Assembly: GCA_025594325.1 (NCBI GenBank) | Contig: JANHCV010000004.1 | Span: 930,001-994,000 of the forward strand | From: Blastocladiella emersonii ATCC 22665 | Lineage: Eukaryota > Fungi > Blastocladiomycota | Length of the DNA stretch: 64,000 bases | Reading direction: 5' to 3' | Shown: piece by piece, positions 6,442 to 18,803 of the stretch | How positions within the stretch are numbered: the first letter of the stretch is position 1 | How the letters are laid out: each line of letters opens with the position of its first letter | The notes under the pieces: generated by a model | The model's database searches: none | Seen by the model: only the letters and a program-made list of their open reading frames with translations | What the model was told of the DNA's origin: nothing | Program-made: the position numbers and the translations under genes

Positions 6442-8603
6442 TTACTCAAAGTCATCCTCGGCATCATCCTCGTAGTCGCCCTCATCGGCAGCATCGGCGT
6501 CATTGTCCTCATCGTCGTCGTCAGCGTCGATCATACCGCCCTTGGCCTGGACGCCGTCGTCCTCGTCCTCGTCGTCGTCATCGACCGTCTTGGCGCGGTG
6601 CGTGGTACCCACATCCTCCTCGTCGTCATCGTCGTCGAACCGGTTCGCCGAGGAGCTCCCGGCGCCCGACGCCGACGGCCGCTCGTCGTCCCACTCCTCG
6701 TCGGCGTCGGCGTCCGCGTCGCGCGAGCTGTGGCCACGGCGACCCGAATCGTCCTCGTCATCGTCGTCGTCGCGGTCGCGCGAGTTGTTACCGCCGCGGC
6801 GGCCGCCGTCCTCCTCCTCGTCATCGTCGTCGCGGTTGCGGGACTGGTTCCCGTTATCGTTGTTGCCCGACTTGTCCTGGTTCTCCTCGTCGACCTGCTG
6901 GCGCGACGTCGAGGTACCGGCACCGGCCGCGCCGGCCGCGCCAGCACCAGCAGCGCCAGCGCCAGCGGCACCCGACCCGCCCGCCGCCGCGGCCGCGCCG
7001 GCGGCCGCCCCGCTGCCCTTCATGAGACTGATGGACGCGGTGACGACGCCGACGGTGGCGCTGGCGGCCATGGCGAAGGGGGAGACGATGCTAGCGTTCT
7101 CGCGGAGGCGCTCCTTGAAGGTCTGGCGGCCGCGGGCCTGGTGCTGCAGGTCGACGACGGCCTGGCGCTCGGGGCACAGGGTGAAGACCGAGTTTTCGTC
7201 GGCGGGGTGCGAGATGTCGCCGGTCAGGCGGGCGGCGAGGGGCGCGTTGCGGGCGAGGCGGCCCGTCTTGGTCTTCTCGATGACGAGGCGCTTCTTGGAC
7301 TTGACGTGGATGAGCGAGACGGCGAGCTGCGAGGCCGGGTCCTTGGTCAGCTGCCACAGGACCTCCTCCGAGTTGATGTCGTCGGTCGTGAAGAAGGTGC
7401 CGTTCGAGTGCGCGCTGATCAATTCTTGGGTCCGGCTGTTCAAGATCACGACAAACTGGTCGCGGGCCTGCTTGCCATCGAGGTGCTTGAGCGTCATCTT
7501 TTCGTTATCCTCGGGGTCCTTGACGAGGGCGAGGAACTCGAAGAAGGCGATCTTGGCGCCCTCGCGCAGCAGGTCGGTCTTGCCGACGAGGATATCGGTG
7601 CCCGAGGGCTTCTCGGCGGCCTCGGCCAGAATGTACGACTCGCGGTCCTTGAACTGGATGGCCGCGGGCACCGTCAGTTCGATGCCGTGGTTGCCCTTCT
7701 TGCGGAAGTCGTCGAGCGCGGAACTCGTCTTGTCCGACTTGACGGCGGCGCGCGTGTCGTCGGCCGTGATGGGGACCATGGGCGCGGGCTTCTTGGCGGG
7801 CATCGGCTGCTGCTGCTGCTGCTGCGGCGGGCGCTGCTGGGGCTGGCCCTGGGCGGGAACGCCGGCGGGGCGCGCCTGCTGAGGCTGGCCCTGAGCCTGC
7901 TGGACAGGCACGACGCGGGGCGCGGCGGCGACGGGAGCACCACCGGCGGGAGCAGCGGCAGCGGGGGCGGGCGCGGGAGCCGCCTTGACGTCGACCTTGG
8001 GCGCGGGCGGCAGGTAGTTCTTGACGGTCACCCCCACCAGGGCGGCGGGCTCGGCGACGGGCACCATGGCGAGCTTGCCGTCCTTGAAGCCAAAGGCAAA
8101 CTCGGGCTTGGAGTTGGACACGAGCGCGAAGACGCCGGGCTTGCCCTCGAGCTCCTGTTCATCGCAACATCGAGTGGTGAGCGGCGCTCGAACAGTAACA
8201 CGGCGGCCAGGAAACGTACCGAGAGCGTCCAGGCCTGGTTGGGGAACGGCTTCATGTTGCCGAACAGCTTCTGCCCACCGACGTTGCCAAAGTAGAGGCG
8301 CATGCCGGGGAAGTGGACCGCGACGATGGCCTTCTCGGCGGCGAGGCGCGCGAGGTCCGCGGGCTTGGCCGGGTCCGTCACGGCGTTGGCGACAATGGGC
8401 CGCAGCGACGCCTGCATGCTCGGGAGCGCCCAGTCGGCGAGCTTGGCGAGCTTGGGCACGCCGCGGTCCAGCTGCAGCAGCGCATCGGGCTCGACGGCCG
8501 ACTCGTCGGCCGCGACGACCGAGAGGTACGGGTAGCCGTCGGCGGGCGGCGCCTGGTACGGCGGCGGCGCGGGGCCGGTCGGGGCGGGGGTCGACGCGAG
8601 CAT
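6442..8603 (-). CDS. Hypothetical protein, 2 exons (8603-8220, 8154-6442); Q/P-rich linker and very acidic C-terminal tail
   Basis: Exon 1 is MLASTPAPTG...NQAWTLS. GTACGT donor at 8219 and CAG acceptor at 8155 splice in frame into ELEGKPGVF. Tail of repeated DDDDE blocks. Confidence 0.75.
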
Positions 8604-8848: not shown

Positions 8849-9841
8849 ATGACCATGATGATCGACACCCTCGACCCGTCCGCCTCCGCGATCCTAATCT
8901 CCGCCTCGTCCGCGCTGCGCGAGAGCTACCTCGGCGCGCTGTGGTGTCCCGTGGAAGCGTTCCGCGCTCGCGTCGCCGTCGACGCCACCGACGCGCCCGT
9001 CGCCGACCCGGCGCCCGCGCACGCCCGGTGGACCGCCGTGCGCGGCGCCGGCGACACGCCGCTCGTCGTGCGCGCCATCACTGCGCCCGCCGAGGGCAGT
9101 GGGGAGCTCTTGGCCGATCTCGTCGCGCTCGCCGCGTTCGCCGCCGCACACCGCCACGTCGTCGGGGTCTCCGGGATCGCGGCGAATGGCGCAGACAAGG
9201 GCACGCTGCTCGTCGCGACGCCCGCGGGGAACGGGTCGCTCGCGGCGCTGCTGCGCAAGTGGGACGTGGCCGCGCGCGAGACGGCGTCGGGTCCCGCCAC
9301 CACCGCCTCGCCGACCACCAACGATACCAGCAGCACGGCCGTGACATCGCTCGGCTCTCGCGCAGCACTGAACCCGGCGACGATGCCGCTGACGCCTCGC
9401 CTCGCGCTGTCGTGGTTCCGCGACATGCTTGAGGGCGTGCTCGTGTGGCACGCGCGCACCGAGTCGGGCGAGCGGCTGTCGCCGACCTTCACGACGCGCG
9501 CGCTGCGGCTGACGCCCGAGTACGTTTACGTGTCGTCGCCGGACCTGCGCGCGCAGATCGATGTCGCGTGGATGTGCGACCCCGACCCCGCGATGCTCGA
9601 CAGCGAGCCCGAGAACCCGGCGGCGTTCGAGCTGCAGGGCCTCAGCGACCTGCTGAGCCAGCTGCAGCGCGCCATGGCGCTCGACCTGGCGGACCCCGCG
9701 GCGGAGAACCTCGCGACCGACCTCCTGTACCTCGTGGTCGAGATCGAGTCGGCCGCCGAGGACCCCGACCTCGTCGACGCCGCGCCCGCGGTCCAGGGCG
9801 CGCTCGAGAGCGTGTGCAAGCTGCTCGCTGAGCTTGACTGA
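8849..9841 (+). CDS. Stand-alone pseudokinase (degenerate protein kinase fold), about 330 aa
   Basis: Ordered remnants of kinase subdomains: PLVVRAI (VAVK), AHRHVVGVSG (HPNIVxLxG), LLVATPAGNGSLAALLR (hinge), LSWFRDMLEGVLVWHAR (alphaE), RALRLTPEYVYV (HRDLKPENILV), AQIDVAW (DFG). Catalytic K, HRD and DFG are absent. Confidence 0.6.
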   Translation: MTMMIDTLDPSASAILISASSALRESYLGALWCPVEAFRARVAVDATDAPVADPAPAHARWTAVRGAGDTPLVVRAITAPAEGSGELLADLVALAAFAAAHRHVVGVSGIAANGADKGTLLVATPAGNGSLAALLRKWDVAARETASGPATTASPTTNDTSSTAVTSLGSRAALNPATMPLTPRLALSWFRDMLEGVLVWHARTESGERLSPTFTTRALRLTPEYVYVSSPDLRAQIDVAWMCDPDPAMLDSEPENPAAFELQGLSDLLSQLQRAMALDLADPAAENLATDLLYLVVEIESAAEDPDLVDAAPAVQGALESVCKLLAELD

Positions 9842-11313: not shown

Positions 11314-14300
11314 TCAAAAGTCCGGGATCTTGTACACCGCGATCTCCGCCTCAACCGCGTCGCGCGCGGCATCGTTCCCCATGGCCGCAAACATCTCTGC
11401 GCGCGCCTGCATCTCGCGCCGCCCATTCGTCCGTGACCGCGCCGCCGCGAGCCGCTCCGACGCGGCGCGGAAACTGACGGGCTCGCCCGCGATCCCGCGC
11501 ACGCTGAACACGGCGAGCCGCGCCAGCGCGCGCTTGTAGTTCGGGAACCGCGCCACCGCGAGCTGGTAGTCGGCGAGCGCGCGCGCGTAGTGTTCGGCTG
11601 CCTCGGCCGTCACCGCGGCCGCCGCCGTCTCGCCCGCGCGCGTTCCGCGGGCCGCCGCGTCGCGCGAGCGTGACGAGGCGAGCTCGCCGAGCGCAAAGTG
11701 CACGTCTGCGCGCCCGCAGTACACGCGCGCGGCCTGGTCTTCCGTGTACGCCGTCGCGCGGCCCGGGTGGTGGATGTCGCCGAACGCGCGCTCGTACAGG
11801 GCGAGCGCGGTCGCGAGACGCGCCGCGTCGTCGCCGGCGGGTCCCGCCACGAGCGAGCGCCACTTGAGCCCGAGCTCGAACAGGACCAGGTCGCCGAGCC
11901 CCGCGCACGCGTACTCGCACCGCTGCTGCCCTGCGGCCACGTCGTACAGATCGAACGCAATGTCCCACGACGCCGACGTGCGGATCTCGGCGGCGGGCGC
12001 GCGCGGGACCGCGCCGAAGTAGTACAGGTCGGCCGCCGTCACCAGCGCCATCGGGACGTGCCCCGACACGCCCGCGCGTAGCAGCTGCAGGACGGTCCCG
12101 CGCACGTCGTAGTCGGGGTTGTCGTACGGCGAACGCGAGATCTGGATTGGGCGGACCGCGGCGCGGTACACCATGAGCGCCGCGTCGTACGTCAGGTCGC
12201 TGTCGCCCGCGGCCGCCGCGCGGCGCAGCGTGTCGAGCTGCGCCGCGTCAATGATCGTCACGGCGCTCGTCGTGAGCCCGTCCAGCAGCTCGAGGTCGCC
12301 CGCGTTCGTCACCTCCGACGAATTGGCGGTCGCGGACGCGGCAGCCGATGCGCGCAGCCGCGCGAGCACCGTCTCGAGCATCTCGGCCACGTGCCGCGGC
12401 GTCGCCTCCTCGTCTTCGGCGCCCTTGCCCTTCTCGATCGCGGCGACCAGCGCACGCAGCGGCGCGACGGGCGACTCGGGCCCGTCCGCCCCGCTCCCCG
12501 CGAGCACCAGTTCGCGCACCACGCCCGCGAGCGCGAGCGTGTCGGCCTGCATCGCGTCGACGCGCGGCATCACCGCGTCCATGCGCGCGAGCCCGGGGAC
12601 GGGCACCTTGGCGACCACGCTGCCCAGCACGTTGCGCATGAACGCGAGCCGCGGCACCGTCAGCCCGACGGGCAGCATGGCTGTCTGCGTCTTACACGTC
12701 GCGACGTGCATCTCCGTCAGCCCGTTGGCGACATCGAGCGCGACCTGCGCGCGGTCCGCGGGCGACATCCCTGCGACGCGCACGTCGCGCAGGACGCGTT
12801 CTGCGACGACACCCCAGTCGCCGCTGCCCGACGCCGCCGACGAGGGGGGCAGGAACCCGTGCACCCGCCGCACGTGCGCGGCCTGCGCGAGCGGGACGAG
12901 CCCGAGCGCGAGCGTCGCGAGCACGTCCTTGGCGCGGTCCGCGGGGCACCGCAGGATTTCGACGGGCGTGCGCCCGCACAGGAGCGCGGGGCCCCACACG
13001 CCCGAAGCCCCCGGCGCGGGCGTCACCTCGGACCAGTCGAACAGCAGCTGCGAGGTCGCGAGCTGCGGGTTTGCGTCGAGCGCGTCGTCGACGGCGAACA
13101 GCGTCTCGAGCTGCGCGTCGACCACACCCGTCGCCGCCTTGGCGGCCGCGGCGCGCGCCTTGGGCCCGAAATTGAGCCCCTTGGCCGCCTCGTCCGACAG
13201 CCCGACGCGTTTCGCGGCCTTGACGAGATCCGCCTGCGCGTCGCACAGGGACTCGGGGAACTGCGCCACGAGCTTGGTCGCGTCCGCCGAAAGCGCGCCC
13301 GGCTCGCTCTCGTCGGCCCACGCCGCGTCGCGCGCATCTGCCAGCGCGTCGGCGAGCACCTTGGCGAGCGCGGTGAGCGCGCGGACCAGCGGCGCGAACC
13401 GTTTCGGAAGCTTGCCCGACGCGGTCCACCCGACGGCCGGCGCGAGCGACCGCGCGTACTCGAGCGCCGGCGAGCCGGGGAGGTCCCACGCGTCGAGGAG
13501 CCGGGCGAGCGTGGTCTCGGCCAGCTGCGCGGCCTTGTCGGCGGCGACGCGCCCGATTGTGAAGTCCGCGGCGAGCGAGCGCACCTCGCCCACCTTGGTT
13601 TCGGCGACGACGGCCCATCCGGCGTACTTCCACACGAGCCAGTCGGGCAGCGCGGGGGTCGCGGCGTCGCCCTCGTACGCGAACGCCTTGTTGAACTGGA
13701 TCGCCGACACGAACGCCGAGTCGTCGACGTCCGACCGGCGCACCACGTCGAGGTCGTCGAGCGAGATGAGGGGGACCGCCGCGGACGTGATGCACCGCAC
13801 CGCGTGCTTGACGGCATCCCGCGCGCTCAGACCCGCGCGCGCGGTCAAGAACTCGGCGTACTTGGACTCGACAGCGGGCGCGAGCGCGAGCGCGAACCGG
13901 TCGAGCGGCATCGTGAACGAGCTGCCCTGCGGCACCATGTACTTCCACACGGCCGCGACCTGCGGGTTCGTGATGTCGCGCAGAAACGCCGCCTCGAGGT
14001 TGAGCCCCGCGACCGCTGCGCGGATCTGGCGGACGGCCGTCACCTGCGACTCTTGCGCCGCGCGGTGCGCCGTCAGAAGCGTCAGCGCGGCCTCGGCGCG
14101 CGTCGACTGCCGCGTCAGGCGGTCGTAGTTGTCGTTGGCCAGCGTGATGGCTTCCTCGGTCCGACGCGCCACGCGGCGCTGGATCGCGATCGACGCCACG
14201 GACGAGTGCGCGTGTAGGTCTGCGAGCATCTCCTCGACGCGCTATACATGGTGTGCTCTTGTCAGTTACGGGTCCTACGAGGTCAGAATGAAACGACGTA

Positions 14301-14986
14301 CCGAGTCGAGATCATCCAGCTCGCGGTCGAGCCGGGCCGAGTTGAACGAGCGCTCCATGGCGCTCGTGTTGGCAAACACCTCGAGGTCGGCGGCGACCCT
14401 CTCCATGATGGACGCGGACCGCGCGAGCTTCTCGTTGAACAGGTCGAGGTGGTGGGTCGACAGCGCGTCAGCTGCGGTGCCCGTGATGCGGTCGTGCAGG
14501 CCCTGCACGATGTTGACAATCGACTGCAGCTTGCTGTAGATGACGCCCACCTTCATCAGGTTGCCCATGGCCTCCTGGCGCACGCGGTCGATGCTACGCG
14601 GGGGCGGGTTAGCGCTGGCCGAGTACTCTCCCAAAGACCACGACGACGTACGCCGTTAGCATGCGGTAGATCGGACGGAACGGCTTGAGCAGGATGACGG
14701 CGGGGATCAGCGCGGCCTGCAGCGCCGGGTTCGACACGACGACGTCGACTTTCTGCAGCGTCTTGGCCCGCCGCTTCAGCGCCGCCTTGCGCAGCCGTGT
14801 CTCGTCGCTCGTCAGGTCCGCCTTGATGTCGCCCAGCCGCTCGGCCAGCGCCTTGGTGGGATCGCGCTCGCCGCCGCCCTCCTCGACGTCGGTCTCGTCC
14901 AGCGCCGTGTTCACTGGCCCGCCGTAGATCGTGGTCAACGCACCCGCGCCCGCGGCGGGTACGACGGCAGTGCTCGATGCGTTCAT
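11314..14986 (-). CDS. Paralog A (about 1184 aa): MLKL/Cbl-N-like helical bundle, helical linker, TKL-type pseudokinase, Sel1-like/TPR repeats
   Basis: Exons 14986-14652, 14593-14302 and 14241-11314 (GTACGT donors, TAG acceptors) total 3555 nt in frame. Kinase remnants: WGPALLCGRTPVEILR, HVRRVHGF, DWGVVAER, RAQVALDVANGLTEMH, AKVPVPGLAR, ADTLALAGVVRELV. Sel1-like: GHVPMALVTAADLYYFG..AFDLYDVAA. Confidence 0.8.
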
Positions 14987-15228
14987 GGTTGGCTGGCAGG
15001 TTTGGTGGGGAGAGAGAGGAGATGGTCGCCAAGGGCTCGCCCGTTGACGACCTCACGCTCGACGGCGGCGCGGCACCGGTTTGCGGTCAAGCGCACGGGC
15101 GGGGGGCGCCGCCACCGCATCGACGAGGCGGTGAAGTCGGACCCTTACTTCCGACTTCTCTCTTTCTCCTCTCTAGACTCGATGCATTGCGTGAGGTGAG
15201 ACCGCGCACACGACGACGAATCGACACC
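14987..15228. promoter_or_regulatory. 242-bp putative bidirectional promoter shared by paralogs A and B, containing a 9-bp-stem inverted repeat (15133-15158)
   Basis: Divergent ATGs at 14986 (-) and 15229 (+). Pyrimidine tracts precede both starts on their own strands. GAAGTCGGA-8 nt-TCCGACTTC. Confidence 0.55.
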
Positions 15229-18200
15229 ATGGCAACGACCGCACCCCCTTCCACCGCTGAGACGACGGCGCTCCTGGCCGCCGAGCCCGCGGGCGCGCTG
15301 ACCGCGACCCTCGACAGCGGCGAGCTGGCGGCGGCGGTGGTCAAGAAGTCGGCGCACGCGGCGCAGCACGAGGACGTCTCGAAGGCCGTGTCGCAGACGC
15401 GCGAGAAGATGACGTCCGAGGACGCGGCGGAGCGGCGCGCGCTGCGCATCCAGCGTGCGGAGCGGCGCGCGCGCGTCAACGAGGCGGCCAACCACATTGG
15501 CGTGCAGGGCACCGTGGCGGCGGCCACGCTGTCGGCGTCGCTCATCTACGGGCCGATTGCGACCAAGAACCCCGTCGCGCTCGCCCTGCGGCCGTACTTT
15601 CGCCTGTGGAACCGGCTGCAGAAGGAGTTTGCCAAGACGCTCGACTCGGCCAACGAGATTGAGCGCCGCGCCATCGACCTGATCCAGCTCGCCGACACGG
15701 CGCTCGATATCTACGCCGACCCCAAGGTCGCCAAGATCGTCGGCGCCCTCCAGCGCGGCGAGATCCTCAAGCTCATCCGCAAGATCGAGTCCAAGATTGC
15801 CGAGGCCACCGAGGTCCTCGAGCGCCTCGACCAGTCGAGCGACACGCGCATGATGCTCATTGGCAACCAGAAGGTCAAGATTGAGCTCGGCCAGATCAAC
15901 GCGGTACGTTTGCTGCGGTCCTCGCTCACGACGAAGGAAGCAGGGCACTCACACTGCCTGCTACGACGTAGACCATCACGTCCGCCCAGGCGCAGCTGCA
16001 CGCCCACATCACCACGTCCATGATGGCGCTGCTCGACCACCAGGGCGAGCGGAACCGCAAGCTCAACGAGTCGCTCGCCGTCGAGAACGCCATGCTCAAG
16101 GAGCAGGGCGGCCGCATCGACGAAATGTACAAGCTCGGGCTCGCGTTCCGCGCGCACGACGAAAAGATGGACAAGCAGCTCGCCCTGCTGCTCGCGCAGG
16201 TCCAGGCCGTCGACAACCGCGCCGGGTTCTGGGCCGACCTCAAGAGCCCCGAGGTGTCGCTCCTGTGGGACGCGGTGGTCGGCCCGCACGGCGACATGGC
16301 GTGCCCCGCGGGCCAGTTCCTCCTGACGCTCGAGGAGCACGTCGAGCGGCTGCGCGGCGACCGCTTCGACCCGATCGACGGGTGGATCCGGTTCGTCAAC
16401 CGGAAGGACGCCGTCGTCACGCTCGCCGACCTCGGGTACACGACCGAGGTCTCGGCCAACCTCGTCAGCGTGCACGCCCTCGACGCGCTGTTCCCCGAGG
16501 ACCCCAACGCCAAGACCAAGCTGCGCCTGAACGTGCTCCTCGGCTGGCGCGCGTACGCGTGGGCCGTCCACGCCAACGACTGCATCGACCGCATCGCCGC
16601 CATCGCCGCGCAGTCCGCCGTGTGCCGGTCCACGGCCCTCGTCACCCGCAACCTCGCGCGCCGCGCCATCGATGGGCTCAAGGCATCGGCGGTGTGGGAT
16701 ATCACGCCCAAGCTCGAGGCCCGCCTTCGCGGCCTCCGCCTCAAGCTCAGCCCCGCCATCGCCGACGCACTCCCGCCGAAATACGCGGCGCTCGTCCGCG
16801 CCCTCGACGCCGTCGAGAAGACGCTCGCCGAGTGCTACACGACGACCGAGGCCGCGGGCTGGCTCGACGACGACGCTGCCGCGAAGCTCGCCGCCGACTT
16901 CCCCGCGCGCATCAGCAAGCTGCAGGACGCCGTCGTCGCCGCCGCGGTCGCGCTCGGGCTCCCCGCCGACGTCGCGCAGGACGCGGCGTGGACGCCGCGC
17001 AACGTCGAGTCGTGCACGGCCAAGGCGCAGGCGGCCATCGAGACGCAGCTCGCGCACTTTGACGAGCTCGCGGGCGCGCTCGAGGCGCGGCCCGACGATA
17101 TCATGGCGGCGCTCGCGGGGCTCGCGTGGGCCGACGTCGGCGCCGCCGCGACCCGCGCGAGCCCGTGGGGCAACGCCGTGCTGTTCAAGTACGACCCGGT
17201 CGCCATCATCCGGTGCCCCGCCGAGGTCGCGCCCGCGGCCATCGCGAACCTCGCGGGCCTCCGCGCGCGCGGCTCCGCGCACCTGCTCCGCGTCTACGGC
17301 GTGCTCCCGCCCACGCCCGCGACGGGTGGGGACTGGGCCGTCGTCGTCGAGCGGTTCGACCCGCACGTTGTGTTCGACAAGCTCGACCTGCAGTCCAAAC
17401 TCGCGGCCGCCGAGGACGTGGTGCGCGCCGCGCAGGTGATCCATGGCGCGCAGGTCGATCTTTCGGGGGATGTCGTCGCGCAGCCGTTCGACGCCAGCCA
17501 TGTCGTCTTCACGCGCAACGTGCTCGGCCAGGTCGCGACCAAGCTCGTCCCGCCGGGCCTCGTCGTCACCGTCAACAGCGTGCCGCTCGCGGGGCTCGCG
17601 ACGCTGGGCACCGAGGCCGCGGCGAAGGCCAATGTCGATGCGCTCGTCAAGTTCATCCAGCGCGCGATCCTCGACGTGCACCCGGCGCCCGCGCGGCCCG
17701 CCGGGTACGACTACGCGGGGCCCGCGCACGACGGCGCGCCGGGCCACCCGGGCGACCTGTTCCGCGCGCTGCGCCGCCACATCGAGCAGCACACCGCGGG
17801 CCGCGCGCCGGCGCCCACGTTCGGCGAGCTTGTCGAGGACCTGCAGCTCGCGCAGTCCAAGTACCGCGAGGCGCTCGAGGCCGAGCCCGGATCGGCGCTC
17901 GTTGGTGGTTCCGCGGGCACGGTGAGCGACGATGCGTCGGTTATCGCGTTCGAGGCGCTGGCGTTCAACACGCCGGCGTCGCCGACCGCGGCGTCGCGGC
18001 TCGGGACCATGTCGGCGGACGAGGCGATGCGCAAGTACTTTGCGGCGCGCGCGACGATCCGCGACTCGCGGCACCGGCCGGCGACGCGGCCCGACTACGA
18101 CGTGCACGACGTGTACCAGAAGCTGGTGGAGGCGGGGCAGTCGGGCCACCAGCCCATGGCGTACGTGGCGGCGGCGGACCTGTTCTACTACGGCACGGTG

Positions 18201-18803
18201 CCGCGCACCCCCGACTCGTGGCGCGTCGCCATGCGCCTGTACCGGCTCGCCATCGAGCAGGGCGCGCTGTACGCGCACGCCGGGATCGGCGACCTGCTCC
18301 TCTTCCACCTCGTCGAGGACCCGACGACCGCGCGTTCGCGCGACGAGATCCTCACCGCCGCCGCAGAGCAGTACGAGCTTGCGCAGCTCGCCCTCACGGA
18401 CCCGGGCACCCGCGCGCTCCTCGCCCCGCACGAGATCGCCCGCGTCGACTGCGGTCTCGGCGACGTGCTCTTCGAGCGCGCGCAGCTCGCCGCGGACGCG
18501 GGCGACGCGCACCTCGCAGAAGACTTGCGCCGCCGCGCCCGCGCACACTACCATGAGGCCAAGGACGAGGACCCGCGCGCGAAACGCGCGTTCGCCCGGC
18601 TCGCCCTGTTCGCCCTGCACGGGTTCGGCGGCGAGGCCCGGTCGCTCCGCAACGCCAACATGTTCCTCGCGTCGGCGCGGTCCGCGGATAACCCCGCGCG
18701 CGAGCTCGCGGCGCGCGCGCAGGTGCTCGCGGTCATCGACGACGGCGAGTCCCTTGCGGCGTGTCGCGCTGAGATGGACGCGTGTACCACGCCCGACCAC
18801 TGA
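15229..18803 (+). CDS. Paralog B (about 1168 aa): MLKL/Cbl-N-like helical bundle, helical linker, TKL-type pseudokinase, Sel1-like/TPR repeats
   Basis: Exons 15229-15903 and 15972-18803 (GTACGT...TAG, phase 0). Kinase remnants: WGNAVLFKYDPVAIIR, HLLRVYGV, DWAVVVER, KLAAAEDVVRAAQVIH, TKLVPPGL. Sel1-like: GHQPMAYVAAADLFYYG..AMRLYRLAIEQG. Motifs are collinear with paralog A. Confidence 0.8.

What the first reader, a model, noticed from the sequence alone, without database searches (positions are those of the whole stretch)
11314..18803. Head-to-head pair of MLKL-like 4HB-pseudokinase-Sel1 paralogs: candidate paired cell-death/immune switch
Seen in the sequence: two ~1170-1185 aa genes are transcribed divergently from a 242-bp spacer. 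They share the same collinear architecture (N-terminal helical bundle, long helical linker, kinase-fold remnant, Sel1-like repeats) but align only in short motifs, so the duplication looks ancient and both copies are retained intact. Established: animal and plant MLKL are a membrane-disrupting four-helix bundle fused to a pseudokinase; Sel1/TPR repeats serve as ligand-sensing domains; and head-to-head paralog pairs on one promoter are the hallmark of plant sensor/executor NLR pairs. Inference: this is an obligate pair (sensor/executor, or executor/inhibitor) for necroptosis-like death or non-self recognition in an early-diverging fungus. I do not know of this paired arrangement being described.
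Basis: partly seen in the sequence, partly recalled or inferred. Interest (0 to 1): 0.88.

Follow-up and report, generated by a model that had tools for sequence, protein, structure and literature searches.

The report
Conserved divergent pair of MLKL-like genes
Two long, distantly related genes of the water mould-like fungus Blastocladiella emersonii sit back-to-back on one short promoter region; each combines a four-helix bundle, a dead kinase and a repeat domain, the general layout of the animal cell-killing protein MLKL, and the pairing is kept in a second genus, which points to joint action that has not been tested.

Summary
Gene A (minus strand, 11314-14986, 1184 aa, H9P43_004062) and gene B (plus strand, 15229-18803, 1168 aa, H9P43_004063) of Blastocladiella emersonii ATCC 22665 are intact paralogs. 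Their start codons lie 242 bp apart. They align end to end at 29% identity (E 1e-69), not only in short motifs.

No Pfam domain is detectable in either protein. Profile links to relatives and structure predictions support three parts:
- a four-helix bundle of the MLKL_N/HeLo-like/plant-CC kind;
- a catalytically dead, shortened TKL-type pseudokinase;
- a Sel1/TPR solenoid.

The family is confined to Blastocladiomycota: 14 hits among 1.84 billion representative proteins.

New here:
- The A/B pair was duplicated as a unit. B. emersonii has three A/B sets with congruent trees, two head-to-head and one 9.6 kb apart.
- Catenaria anguillulae has the same head-to-head pair, its B gene unannotated, with no flanking synteny.
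- The bundles are type-specific, whereas the C-terminal halves cluster by species.
- More distant family members are singletons.

A sensor/executor or death function remains inference: no expression, interaction or toxicity data exist.

The scan also noted the second pair elsewhere in this genome (s1-076437). I rate this a new variant of a known kind.

The parts
11314..14986 (-). Gene A (H9P43_004062, P0005, 1184 aa): exons 14986-14652, 14593-14302, 14241-11314 including the stop codon
   Evidence: The spliced translation is identical to P0005; database identity
14594..14651 (-). Gene A intron 1, 58 nt, GTACGT...TAG with a CTAAC branch motif
14242..14301 (-). Gene A intron 2, 60 nt, phase 0 after residue 209; same alignment column as the gene B intron
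14987..15228 (.). 242-bp divergent intergenic spacer between the two start codons (presumed bidirectional promoter)
   Evidence: Poorly conserved against the 264-bp spacer of the paralogous pair, except next to the ATGs
15229..18803 (+). Gene B (H9P43_004063, P0001, 1168 aa): exons 15229-15903 and 15972-18803 including the stop codon
   Evidence: The spliced translation is identical to P0001
15904..15971 (+). Gene B intron, 68 nt, phase 0 after residue 225
14173..14698 (-). Gene A four-helix bundle, residues about 97-232 (helices 101-119, 124-148, 158-187, 197 onward). It is preceded by a hydrophobic stretch at residues 82-100 and a basic helix
   Evidence: AF2 model m07bb9a9592b9; Foldseek and VIA matches; ESM features nearest MLKL_N clusters, score 0.88 with 188 shared features; hydropathy
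13915..14172 (-). Gene A long continuous helix after the bundle ('brace'), residues about 233-318, ending at an invariant Trp (W308)
13066..13914 (-). Gene A middle helical domain, residues about 319-601; no recognised family
   Evidence: This is the best-conserved stretch linking A/B to the P0009/P0010 relatives
12493..13065 (-). Gene A pseudokinase-like region, residues about 602-792; no catalytic Lys, HRD Asp or DFG Asp, and a short activation segment
   Evidence: hhalign A7 vs A8: probability 94%, E 1.3e-7, 210 columns; alignment; not detected on its own
11317..12192 (-). Gene A C-terminal Sel1/TPR-like solenoid, residues 893-1184
   Evidence: The family profile hits Sel1 and TPR structures; alignment
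15589..15992 (+). Gene B four-helix bundle, residues about 121-232 (spans the intron); B-type-specific motif LDxANEIERR
15993..17096 (+). Gene B long helix (233-330) and middle helical domain (331-600)
17097..17696 (+). Gene B pseudokinase-like region, residues about 601-800 (VAIIR, HVVFTRN and KLVPPGL in place of VAIK, HRDLKxxN and DFG)
18012..18800 (+). Gene B C-terminal Sel1/TPR-like solenoid, residues 906-1168
   Evidence: The top Foldseek PDB hits of model mc55f4a3cb6ef are all Sel1-repeat proteins; profile search

Best explanation
Genes A and B are the two members of a heterotypic gene pair. They belong to a Blastocladiomycota-specific protein family with an MLKL-like layout. Each protein has an N-terminal extension with a basic helix, a four-helix bundle of the MLKL_N/HeLo-like/plant-CC kind, and a long 'brace' helix. 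These are followed by an extra helical domain, a catalytically dead and shortened TKL-type pseudokinase, and a C-terminal Sel1/TPR solenoid. SHOWN: the genes are intact; they are full-length paralogs with a shared intron; the pair is older than the split between Blastocladiella emersonii and Catenaria; it was copied as a unit; the bundles have stayed A-specific and B-specific, while the pseudokinase and repeat halves cluster by species. INFERRED: the two genes are co-expressed from the shared 242-bp spacer. Their products associate through the matched pseudokinase/repeat halves. The repeat domain receives a signal (a protein or ligand). The pseudokinase acts as a conformational switch, as in MLKL, and releases one or both bundles to act on a membrane. 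With two different bundles, one partner would regulate the other (executor plus modulator). The likely biological role is a regulated cell-death or non-self/stress response.
For: Paralogy and gene models.

Family range: an exhaustive HMM search of 1.84 billion representatives gave only 14 hits at E<=1e-3. All are of similar length (one 265-aa fragment aside). All but one unnamed metagenome protein come from Blastocladiomycota: Catenaria, Allomyces (3 species), Blastocladiella britannica and Sorochytrium.

Pseudokinase:
- Relatives P0009, P0010, P0011 and P0015 pass Pfam PK_Tyr_Ser-Thr at the aligned position.
- The A/B region aligns to theirs by hhalign at probability 94%, E 1.3e-7 over 210 columns.
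- The family profile hits TYK2 JH2 (3.5e-13), MLKL (3.6e-10) and RIPK1 (4e-9).
- Catalytic residues are absent.

Bundle:
- The AF2 model shows a four-helix bundle at residues 97-232.
- Foldseek gives Rx CC (probability 0.99) and RPW8.2 and RPW8-like 1 (probability 1.0). In AFDB clusters it gives 'Mixed lineage kinase domain-containing' and 'Fungal N-terminal domain' proteins.
- VIA gives Rx CC Z 11.4-12, MLA13 CC Z 10, and the MLKL 4HB Z 8.6 over MLKL residues 2-117.
- The top PDB hit of the family N-terminal profile is MLKL (E 0.009), followed by five more MLKL N-domain sequences.
- Pfam MLKL_N hits P0017 at E 5e-5.
- The nearest named ESM-feature clusters are MLKL_N for A (0.88, 188 features) and for B (0.79).

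Repeats.

Pairing:
- A second head-to-head pair has a 264-bp spacer (L001), inside a wider collinear duplication.
- The third set is linked at 9.6 kb.
- Catenaria has A-type P0008 head-to-head (361 bp) with an intact, unannotated 1184-aa B-type gene.
- No flanking synteny is shared between the species.
- The trees are congruent: (A3,(A1,A2)) and (B3,(B1,B2)).
- Bundles are type-specific but pseudokinase plus repeats cluster by species.
Against: - Neither window protein hits any Pfam family, even at E<=10.
- Profiles built from the A/B clade alone hit neither kinases nor MLKL in the PDB, so the domain labels rest on transitive homology.
- Both AF2 models have low confidence (pLDDT 55 and 65).
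- Z scores of 8-12 are common for any helical bundle; designed proteins, the Cbl TKB four-helix bundle and IncA score as high.
- hhalign links the A/B bundle to the P0009/P0010 subfamily (probability 96.5%). It does not link it to the P0015/P0017 subfamily that carries the Pfam MLKL_N signal; only 32 columns align.
- The bundle lies 95-120 residues from the N-terminus, unlike MLKL, HeLo and CC domains, whose first helix is N-terminal.
- One B. emersonii set is no longer head-to-head.
- The other subfamilies are singletons.
- Short spacers are the norm in this genome.
- The clustering of C-terminal halves by species could be a composition artefact of the 70-75% GC genome (composition flags).
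- There are no expression, interaction or activity data.
Confidence: 0.5

Rival explanations
1. The two genes are ordinary paralogs left side by side by an old inverted tandem duplication in a compact genome. Each works on its own, for example as a homo-oligomer, and the head-to-head arrangement carries no function.
For: Spacers of 100-400 bp and mixed orientations are normal here. The third A/B set has been separated by three genes and an inversion without loss of either gene. The other subfamilies of the same family exist as single genes. The spacer sequence is not conserved between the two B. emersonii pairs.
Against: Head-to-head adjacency is kept in three of four loci and across two genera, while all flanking genes differ. 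A and B were always duplicated together and have congruent trees. No A-type gene was found without a linked B-type gene. The C-terminal halves of partners resemble each other more than their orthologs do.
Confidence: 0.28
2. The proteins are pseudokinase/TPR scaffolds for a housekeeping or developmental process of zoosporic fungi, such as trafficking, cytoskeleton or signalling. The N-terminal bundle is a generic four-helix protein-interaction module, not a membrane-disrupting MLKL-type domain. No cell death is involved.
For: Structural matches to the bundle are not specific. Designed helical proteins, the Cbl TKB four-helix bundle, SNARE-like IncA and a microtubule inner protein score as well as plant CC domains and better than MLKL. 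The bundle is internal rather than N-terminal, and there is no strong transmembrane-type segment in B. Pseudokinase-plus-repeat scaffolds are common (general knowledge; ILK and KSR are among the profile hits).
Against: Three independent kinds of evidence single out the MLKL_N/HeLo-like/RPW8/CC group among named families. These are the PDB profile search, Pfam on P0017, ESM features for both A and B, and Foldseek against AlphaFold DB. The pseudokinase profile also ranks MLKL and RIPK1 near the top. Lineage-restricted, duplicating, fast-diverging families are more typical of conflict or immunity genes than of housekeeping scaffolds (inference).
Confidence: 0.2
3. One or both genes are pseudogenes or annotation or assembly artefacts.
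For: An apparent frame change in the first 400 nt of gene A when read as plain ORFs.
Against: The frame change is a 58-nt intron with GTACGT, CTAAC and TAG signals, and the spliced product equals the database protein. Read-derived contigs match the assembly exactly. Seven further intact copies exist in two species.
Confidence: 0.02

Closest known systems
Animal MLKL (four-helix bundle, two brace helices, pseudokinase), the executioner of necroptosis
   Same: The domain order is the same: bundle, helical connector, catalytically dead TKL-type pseudokinase. MLKL N-domains are the top PDB hits of the family's N-terminal profile. MLKL pseudokinase domains are among the top hits of its kinase profile. 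The predicted bundle superposes on MLKL residues 2-117 at Z 8.6.
   Different: About 1170-1185 aa against about 470. The bundle is preceded by 95-120 extra residues. There is an extra helical domain of about 270 residues. The kinase C-lobe and activation segment are shortened. A C-terminal Sel1/TPR solenoid is added. No RIPK3-like partner is known. The genes occur as a heterotypic pair. Neither window protein passes Pfam MLKL_N or a kinase model.
Plant MLKLs (AtMLKL1-3) and RPW8 / CC-type NLR N-domains
   Same: A HeLo/4HB-type bundle followed by a multi-helix brace and a pseudokinase (bioRxiv 10.1101/681015). Rx CC, MLA13 CC, NRG1 CC-R and RPW8 proteins are the best named structural matches of the gene A bundle.
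   Different: Plant MLKLs end in a serine-rich region rather than a Sel1/TPR domain and are not described as divergent heterotypic pairs. No sequence-level hit links the window proteins to them.
Fungal HeLo / HeLo-like (HELL) cell-death domains, including HELL domains fused to kinase or pseudokinase domains
   Same: Fungal bundle domains related to the MLKL 4HB. The review PMC12881547 notes that some HELL domains sit in proteins with kinase or pseudokinase domains. 'Fungal N-terminal domain' and fungal 'Mixed lineage kinase domain-containing' AlphaFold clusters are among the Foldseek hits.
   Different: The described cases are from Dikarya and are activated by amyloid templating from NLRs. No amyloid motif or NLR neighbour is seen here. 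No paper in the searchable library connects MLKL with Blastocladiomycota.
Glomeromycotina kinase-Sel1 repeat protein expansion (listed as TCDB MLKL-family homologs with Sel1 repeats in PMC8778642)
   Same: A TKL-type kinase-like domain followed by Sel1 repeats in an early-diverging fungal lineage. This is the nearest ESM-feature cluster for whole protein B (0.86, 196 shared features).
   Different: Those proteins keep Pfam-detectable kinase and Sel1 domains. They were not reached by the exhaustive family HMM search. No pairing is reported.
Head-to-head paired plant NLRs (e.g. RGA4/RGA5, RRS1/RPS4; from general knowledge)
   Same: Two diverged paralogs are transcribed divergently from a short shared spacer, inherited and duplicated as a unit.
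   Different: The protein class is entirely different: no NB-ARC, NACHT or LRR domain. No integrated decoy was recognised, and a sensor/helper division of labour is not shown here.

Membership tests
MLKL / MLKL_N (PF22215) - HeLo-like - RPW8/CC bundle superfamily | N-terminal domain recognised by the MLKL_N (or HeLo / HeLo-like / RPW8) sequence model | tested here: inconclusive
   There was no hit for A or B even at E<=10. One relative, P0017, hits MLKL_N at E 5e-5 (23.3 bits, cutoff 27). The family N-terminal profile's best PDB hit is MLKL at E 0.009, but a profile of the A/B clade alone finds nothing. ESM features place A (0.88, 188 features) and B (0.79) nearest MLKL_N clusters.
MLKL / MLKL_N - HeLo-like - RPW8/CC bundle superfamily | Up-down four-helix bundle fold | tested here: met
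   The AF2 model of A residues 1-318 (pLDDT 65) shows a bundle at residues 97-232. Matches include Rx CC (Z 12, rmsd 2.6, 105 of 112 residues), MLA13 CC (Z 10), NRG1 CC-R (Z 8.8-10.1), the MLKL 4HB (Z 8.6) and RPW8.2 (Foldseek probability 1.0). Caveat: this Z range is not specific for helical bundles.
MLKL | Bundle at the extreme N-terminus, with the first helix free to engage membrane | tested here: not met
   The bundle starts at about residue 97 in A and about 121 in B, after a disordered stretch and a basic helix. In subfamilies P0012/16 and P0015/17 the homologous region starts at the N-terminus.
MLKL | Pseudokinase domain C-terminal to the bundle, with a kinase fold but degraded catalytic motifs | tested here: met
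   Met indirectly. hhalign of the A/B region against the relatives' Pfam-positive kinase domain gives probability 94%, E 1.3e-7. The family profile hits TYK2 JH2, MLKL and RIPK1. VAIK Lys, HRD Asp and DFG Asp are all replaced. Pfam or a PDB search does not detect it directly in A or B, and the fold is poorly modelled (pLDDT <50).
MLKL | Activation by an upstream kinase (RIPK3) and membrane permeabilisation by the released bundle | not testable with these tools
   This needs experiments. The NCBI product name 'RIPK3' on paralogs P0002-P0004 has no Pfam support.
Protein kinase superfamily (PF00069 / PF07714) | Passes the Pfam kinase model | tested here: not met
   There was no hit in any of the seven A/B-clade proteins. 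It is met in relatives P0009, P0010, P0011 and P0015 (30-59 bits against a cutoff of 23.1).
Sel1-like repeat / TPR solenoids (PF08238; clan TPR) | Sel1 or TPR repeat models or fold in the C-terminal region | tested here: met
   There was no Pfam hit in A or B themselves. The top Foldseek PDB hits of the confident C-terminal model are all Sel1-repeat proteins (E 2.5e-4, probability 1.0). The family profile hits Sel1 proteins at 3e-9 to 5e-8 and consensus TPRs at 1e-37. Relatives give sub- and near-threshold Sel1, TPR_19 and TPR_2 hits. The region is best called a mixed Sel1/TPR solenoid.
Head-to-head sensor/executor immune receptor pairs (plant paired NLRs) | Divergent paralog pair inherited as a unit | tested here: met
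Head-to-head sensor/executor immune receptor pairs (plant paired NLRs) | NB-ARC/NACHT nucleotide-binding switch domain; one partner with an integrated sensor domain | tested here: not met
   There is no such Pfam domain in any member. A and B have the same domain set.

The most novel reading that the evidence does not exclude
The A/B pair is a self-contained two-component death or non-self switch that predates the Blastocladiella-Catenaria split. It would consist of two MLKL-like proteins with different four-helix heads but co-evolving (or gene-converted) pseudokinase/repeat bodies, in which one restrains or licenses the other. Such a necroptosis-like module would work without a RIPK-type activating kinase, and it would show that paired-receptor logic arose independently in zoosporic fungi.
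Probability: 0.22. Interest if true: 0.85.

Novelty: new variant of a known kind. Interest (0 to 1): 0.6.

Why it matters
MLKL-type executioners are known from animals and plants. MLKL-related bundles are known from Dikarya, where they are usually driven by NLRs and amyloid signals.

A family with bundle, pseudokinase and repeat sensor in one chain, restricted to one early-diverging fungal phylum, would extend that picture. It would indicate how widely the bundle-plus-pseudokinase layout occurs.

The conserved heterotypic pairing offers a tractable genetic handle. Two genes and one promoter region can be tested for mutual dependence, in an organism already being developed as a model.

The contrast between type-specific heads and species-specific bodies is a concrete, testable signature of either gene conversion or co-evolution between partners.

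Tried and rejected
- Pfam on whole proteins and on sub-regions at E<=10 gave nothing meaningful for A or B.
- PDB sequence searches with the full-length profile found only a spurious coiled-coil match to a coronavirus spike heptad repeat. Profiles of the A/B clade alone found nothing relevant for the kinase-like region or the N-terminus.
- The profile of the P0015/P0017 N-termini did not recover MLKL, although P0017 alone does weakly.
- The ESM Atlas structure search with the bundle model was uninformative.
- The full-length AF2 model was too poor in the kinase region to test the fold.
- RNA evidence was not obtainable. No RNA run holding this DNA is served. The three runs that hold it are DNA, with introns and spacer covered evenly and no splice joints.
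- The neighbouring 330-aa gene at 8849-9841, called a stand-alone pseudokinase by another note, showed no significant similarity to the A/B kinase-like region or to the relatives' kinase domains.
- I considered whether the head-to-head pair is only part of a whole-genome duplication or an uncollapsed haplotype. I rejected this because paralog identity is 63-66% and BUSCO duplication is 1.2% (PMC9730499).
- I did not attempt dN/dS, because synonymous sites are saturated at 63-66% protein identity in a 72% GC genome.

Full report
WHAT IS THERE. The window comes from Blastocladiella emersonii ATCC 22665 (assembly GCA_025594325.1). The two large ORFs match, at 100% identity, NCBI proteins H9P43_004062 (P0005, 1184 aa) and H9P43_004063 (P0001, 1168 aa). 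The region has 65-75% G+C.

I rebuilt both gene models from the DNA.
- Gene A lies on the minus strand, with exons 14986-14652, 14593-14302 and 14241-11314.
- Gene B lies on the plus strand, with exons 15229-15903 and 15972-18803.
- The spliced translations equal the database proteins exactly.
- All three introns are 58-68 nt and start with GTACGT.
- The apparent frameshift near the 5' end of gene A is the 58-nt intron, which has a CTAAC branch motif.
- The start codons are 242 bp apart.
- Contigs from independent DNA reads match 13000-17500 without a difference.

ARE THEY PARALOGS? BLASTP of the two large exons gives 29% identity over about 970 residues, E 1e-69, collinear from end to end. 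The one intron of B and the second intron of A lie in the same alignment column in phase 0 (LDDLDS|RVEEMLADLHAH against LGQINA|TITSAQAQLHAH). So the duplication copied an intron-bearing gene. Identity is uneven: 12-15% in the bundle, about 31% in the kinase-like region and 40-42% in the C-terminal repeats.

THE FAMILY. A word-indexed search found only B. emersonii paralogs: B-type P0002 (63%) and P0003/P0004 (45-47%, two forms of one gene), and A-type P0006 (66%) and P0007 (45%). An exhaustive HMM search of 1.84 billion representative proteins with a five-sequence profile returned only 14 proteins at E<=1e-3. All the named ones are from Blastocladiomycota. The sources are Catenaria anguillulae, three Allomyces species, Blastocladiella britannica and Sorochytrium milnesiophthora, plus one unnamed metagenome protein. 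Apart from one 265-aa fragment (P0014), they are 1026-1195 aa long and collinear with A and B. This is a phylum-restricted family with at least four subfamilies.

DOMAINS. Neither A nor B, nor any of the seven A/B-clade proteins, hits a Pfam family, even when cut into regions and scanned at E<=10. The domain labels therefore rest on three indirect routes.

(1) C-terminus. The only confidently modelled part of the full-length AF2 model (pLDDT 70-89 over residues 960-1165) gives Sel1-repeat proteins as all top Foldseek PDB hits: 6ok3, LceB, LpnE, HcpC and SEL1L, from E 2.5e-4 at probability 1.0. A profile of this region from 18 family members hits Sel1 proteins at 3e-9 to 5e-8 with its first half, and consensus TPRs at down to 1e-37 with its second half. 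Relatives give Sel1, TPR_19, TPR_2 and TPR_1 Pfam hits. The region is best called a mixed Sel1/TPR solenoid.

(2) Kinase-like region.
- Relatives P0009, P0010, P0011 and P0015 pass Pfam PK_Tyr_Ser-Thr (30-59 bits against a cutoff of 23.1) at the position that aligns with residues about 600-800 of A and B.
- hhalign of the A/B-clade region against the relatives' region gives probability 94%, E 1.3e-7 over 210 columns.
- The combined profile hits TYK2 JH2 (3.5e-13), MLKL pseudokinase domains (3.6e-10; several among the first 16 rows), LysM receptor kinases, RIPK1 (4e-9), KSR and ILK. This is a TK/TKL-like domain resembling known pseudokinases.
- In A and B the VAIK lysine is Arg, Gln or Glu (PVAIIR, PVEILR). 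The HRD and catalytic-loop residues are gone (SHVVFTRN). DFG is PPG or VPG. Only about 10-24 residues separate that motif from the alphaF-like AD..AL helix, so the activation segment is largely deleted.
- Even the Pfam-positive relatives lack the HRD aspartate and DFG (HRC, HGR, GGL), so the whole family looks catalytically dead.
- On their own, the A/B sequences do not find kinases.

(3) N-terminal bundle.
- An AF2 model of A residues 1-318, built with a 20-sequence family alignment (pLDDT 65), shows helices 101-119, 124-148, 158-187 and 197-288. This is a four-helix bundle whose last helix runs on as a helix of about 90 residues.
- Foldseek finds potato Rx CC (probability 0.99, TM 0.62-0.66 by target). 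In Swiss-Prot models it finds RPW8.2 and RPW8-like 1 (probability 1.0, model residues 95-253).
- In AlphaFold clusters it finds, at probability 1.0, an Allomyces family member. It also finds two 'Mixed lineage kinase domain-containing' fungal proteins, several 'Fungal N-terminal domain' proteins and a plant 'Disease resistance N-terminal domain'.
- VIA-align gives Rx CC Z 11.4-12.0, MLA13 CC Z 10.0, NRG1 CC-R Z 8.8-10.1, and mouse MLKL Z 8.6 over MLKL residues 2-117.
- Designed proteins, the Cbl TKB four-helix bundle and IncA score equally well, and the tool warns that such Z values are common for helical bundles.
- At sequence level, the profile of all 20 N-termini has MLKL as its best PDB hit (6lk5, E 0.009), followed by five further MLKL N-domain sequences (about 0.03). 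These align to MLKL helices 3-4.
- P0017 alone finds only MLKL chains (E 0.07-0.7) and hits Pfam MLKL_N at E 5e-5, just under the cutoff.
- The language-model features of the window's own N-terminal regions are closest, among named clusters, to fungal MLKL_N clusters (A: 0.88 with 188 of 256 features; B: 0.79).
- Against this, the A/B-only profile finds no MLKL. hhalign ties the A/B bundle firmly to the P0009/P0010 subfamily (probability 96.5%, E 8.6e-10, 215 columns). To the P0015/P0017 subfamily it aligns only over the last 32 columns.

I put the bundle's membership of the MLKL_N/HeLo-like/CC superfamily at about 75%.

Two differences from MLKL matter for mechanism. First, the bundle is preceded by 95-120 residues: a disordered stretch and then a conserved basic helix (SDE..R..RKRRA). 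Second, a hydrophobic stretch lies directly before the bundle in A (residues 82-100, mean hydropathy 1.96). In subfamilies P0012/16 and P0015/17 the homologous region begins at the very N-terminus. Between the brace and the pseudokinase lies a helical domain of about 270 residues with no recognised family.

THE PAIRING. This is where the tools added most.

(a) Contig JANHCV010000002 carries B-type P0002 and A-type P0006 head-to-head, 264 bp apart. They lie inside a wider collinear duplication that also includes neighbouring genes.

(b) Contig JANHCV010000013 carries A-type P0007 and B-type P0003 on the same strand, 9.6 kb apart, with three unrelated genes between them.

(c) In Catenaria anguillulae, the A-type P0008 faces a 4.5-kb 'empty' interval. 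That interval in fact encodes an intact, unannotated gene on the opposite strand.
- It consists of two ORFs of 457 and 729 aa joined by a 78-nt GTATGT...CAG intron.
- The product is 1184 aa and ends in the family's PEH motif.
- The ATGs of the two genes are 361 bp apart.
- Its first exon matches B (P0001 residues 17-426, E 8e-26, including LDLANEIERK) but barely matches A (E 0.002).

(d) Nothing else within the 20-24 kb compared is shared between the Catenaria locus and any of the three B. emersonii loci. The pair is an island of conserved arrangement.

(e) In the family tree, the A genes branch as (A3,(A1,A2)) and the B genes as (B3,(B1,B2)), with full support. The sets were therefore copied as units.

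(f) The more distant subfamilies are single genes beside unrelated neighbours in Sorochytrium, Allomyces and Catenaria. Pairing is a derived feature of the A/B clade.

(g) B. emersonii shows almost no gene duplication overall (BUSCO 1.2%; PMC9730499). The three sets are not a by-product of genome doubling.

A MOSAIC HISTORY. Domain by domain, the bundles are type-specific. Catenaria A against B. emersonii A is 31% identical, but 14% against B. Catenaria B against B. emersonii B is 25%, but 15% against A. The bundle tree joins Catenaria B to the B. emersonii B genes (support 89). The pseudokinase-plus-repeat half instead clusters by species: Catenaria A with Catenaria B (support 99; 53% identity in the repeats against about 39% across species), and all B. 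emersonii A with all B. emersonii B (support 96). In Catenaria the 3' ends of the two genes are still 74% alike at DNA level over 131 nt.

Three readings remain open:
- gene conversion between the inverted partners;
- co-evolution of interacting C-terminal halves;
- an amino-acid composition artefact of the very GC-rich B. emersonii genome (composition warnings).

I could not separate these.

HOW IT PROBABLY WORKS. The architecture, the homology and the conserved, co-duplicated divergent pair are shown. Everything else is inferred by analogy with MLKL, plant MLKLs and fungal HeLo-like proteins (reviewed in PMC12881547 and PMC10197012):
- The two genes share a regulatory region and are made together.
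- They associate through the matched pseudokinase/repeat halves.
- The Sel1/TPR solenoid binds a partner or ligand.
- The dead kinase acts as a conformational switch.
- One or both bundles, with the adjacent hydrophobic stretch and basic helix, then act on a membrane.

Two distinct, separately conserved bundles suggest a division of labour. Nothing here shows which partner would be executor or regulator, or that the outcome is death. The main rivals are that the adjacency has no function, and that these proteins are scaffolds unrelated to death. Both remain live.

NOVELTY. The library holds no paper linking MLKL with Blastocladiomycota, Allomyces, Catenaria or Blastocladiella. The general idea that fungal HeLo-like domains can be fused to kinase or pseudokinase domains is already in a review (PMC12881547). 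Kinase-Sel1 proteins listed as MLKL-family homologs have been reported in Glomeromycotina (PMC8778642).

Four things appear new:
- this phylum-restricted family;
- its extra domains;
- the conserved heterotypic head-to-head pair;
- the contrast between type-specific heads and species-specific bodies.

The NCBI product name 'Receptor-interacting serine/threonine-protein kinase 3' on P0002-P0004 is not supported by any domain hit. Other first-stage notes of this scan describe the same genes and the second pair on another piece of this genome. I checked the second pair directly.

Noticed in passing
L003:6007-9639 (minus strand; Catenaria anguillulae MCFL01000006.1): An intact 1184-aa B-type family member is missing from the GenBank annotation. 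It consists of two ORFs (457 and 729 aa) joined by a 78-nt intron at 8249-8326, head-to-head with ORZ39117 (P0008).
   Followed up: yes
L003:461-2987 and L003:13891-16417 (also 1-366 and 16480-16845): A 2.5-kb, 99% identical inverted repeat, plus a further 366-nt arm, brackets the Catenaria A/B pair and a bestrophin gene. It could permit inversion of the whole segment, or it could be an assembly artefact.
   Followed up: no
window:8849-9841 (+); L001:13896-14843 (-); L002:8673-9653 (+): A 315-330-aa gene without any Pfam hit lies within about 1.5 kb of the A-type gene in all three B. emersonii loci (49-56% identity among copies) and is absent from the Catenaria locus. Another note calls it a stand-alone pseudokinase, but hhalign against the family's kinase regions gives a probability under 2%.
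   Followed up: partly
window:9910-11199 (-): A 429-aa ORF (called an alpha/beta-hydrolase with a changed nucleophile elbow by another note) lies between gene A and the small companion gene. It has no Pfam hit and has no counterpart in the otherwise collinear paralogous locus L001.
   Followed up: partly
L006:9509-13023 (+; Catenaria anguillulae MCFL01000003.1): The Catenaria ortholog of the P0009/P0010 subfamily is annotated as two fragments (265 aa and 229 aa) but reads through as one gene of about 1100 aa. An epimerase/3-beta-HSD gene lies upstream, as it does at the Allomyces P0010 locus (L005).
   Followed up: partly
P0002, P0003, P0004 (B. emersonii paralogs on other contigs): The NCBI product name 'Receptor-interacting serine/threonine-protein kinase 3' is attached to three B-type paralogs that have no detectable kinase domain in Pfam. 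The window's own genes are named 'hypothetical protein'.
   Followed up: yes
window:5400-8500 vs L001:15160-17867: The segmental duplication that copied the pair also copied at least two further genes, including one rich in low-complexity acidic and Gln/Pro tracts. Part of that gene recurs several times in L001 2600-5100.
   Followed up: no
L003:9639 (start of the Catenaria B-type protein): The Catenaria B-type protein begins MGFFKKKQ, a Gly-2 followed by basic residues that resembles a myristoylation-plus-polybasic membrane signal. The B. emersonii B proteins begin differently (MATTAPP, MKYAPV, MLSSSL).
   Followed up: no
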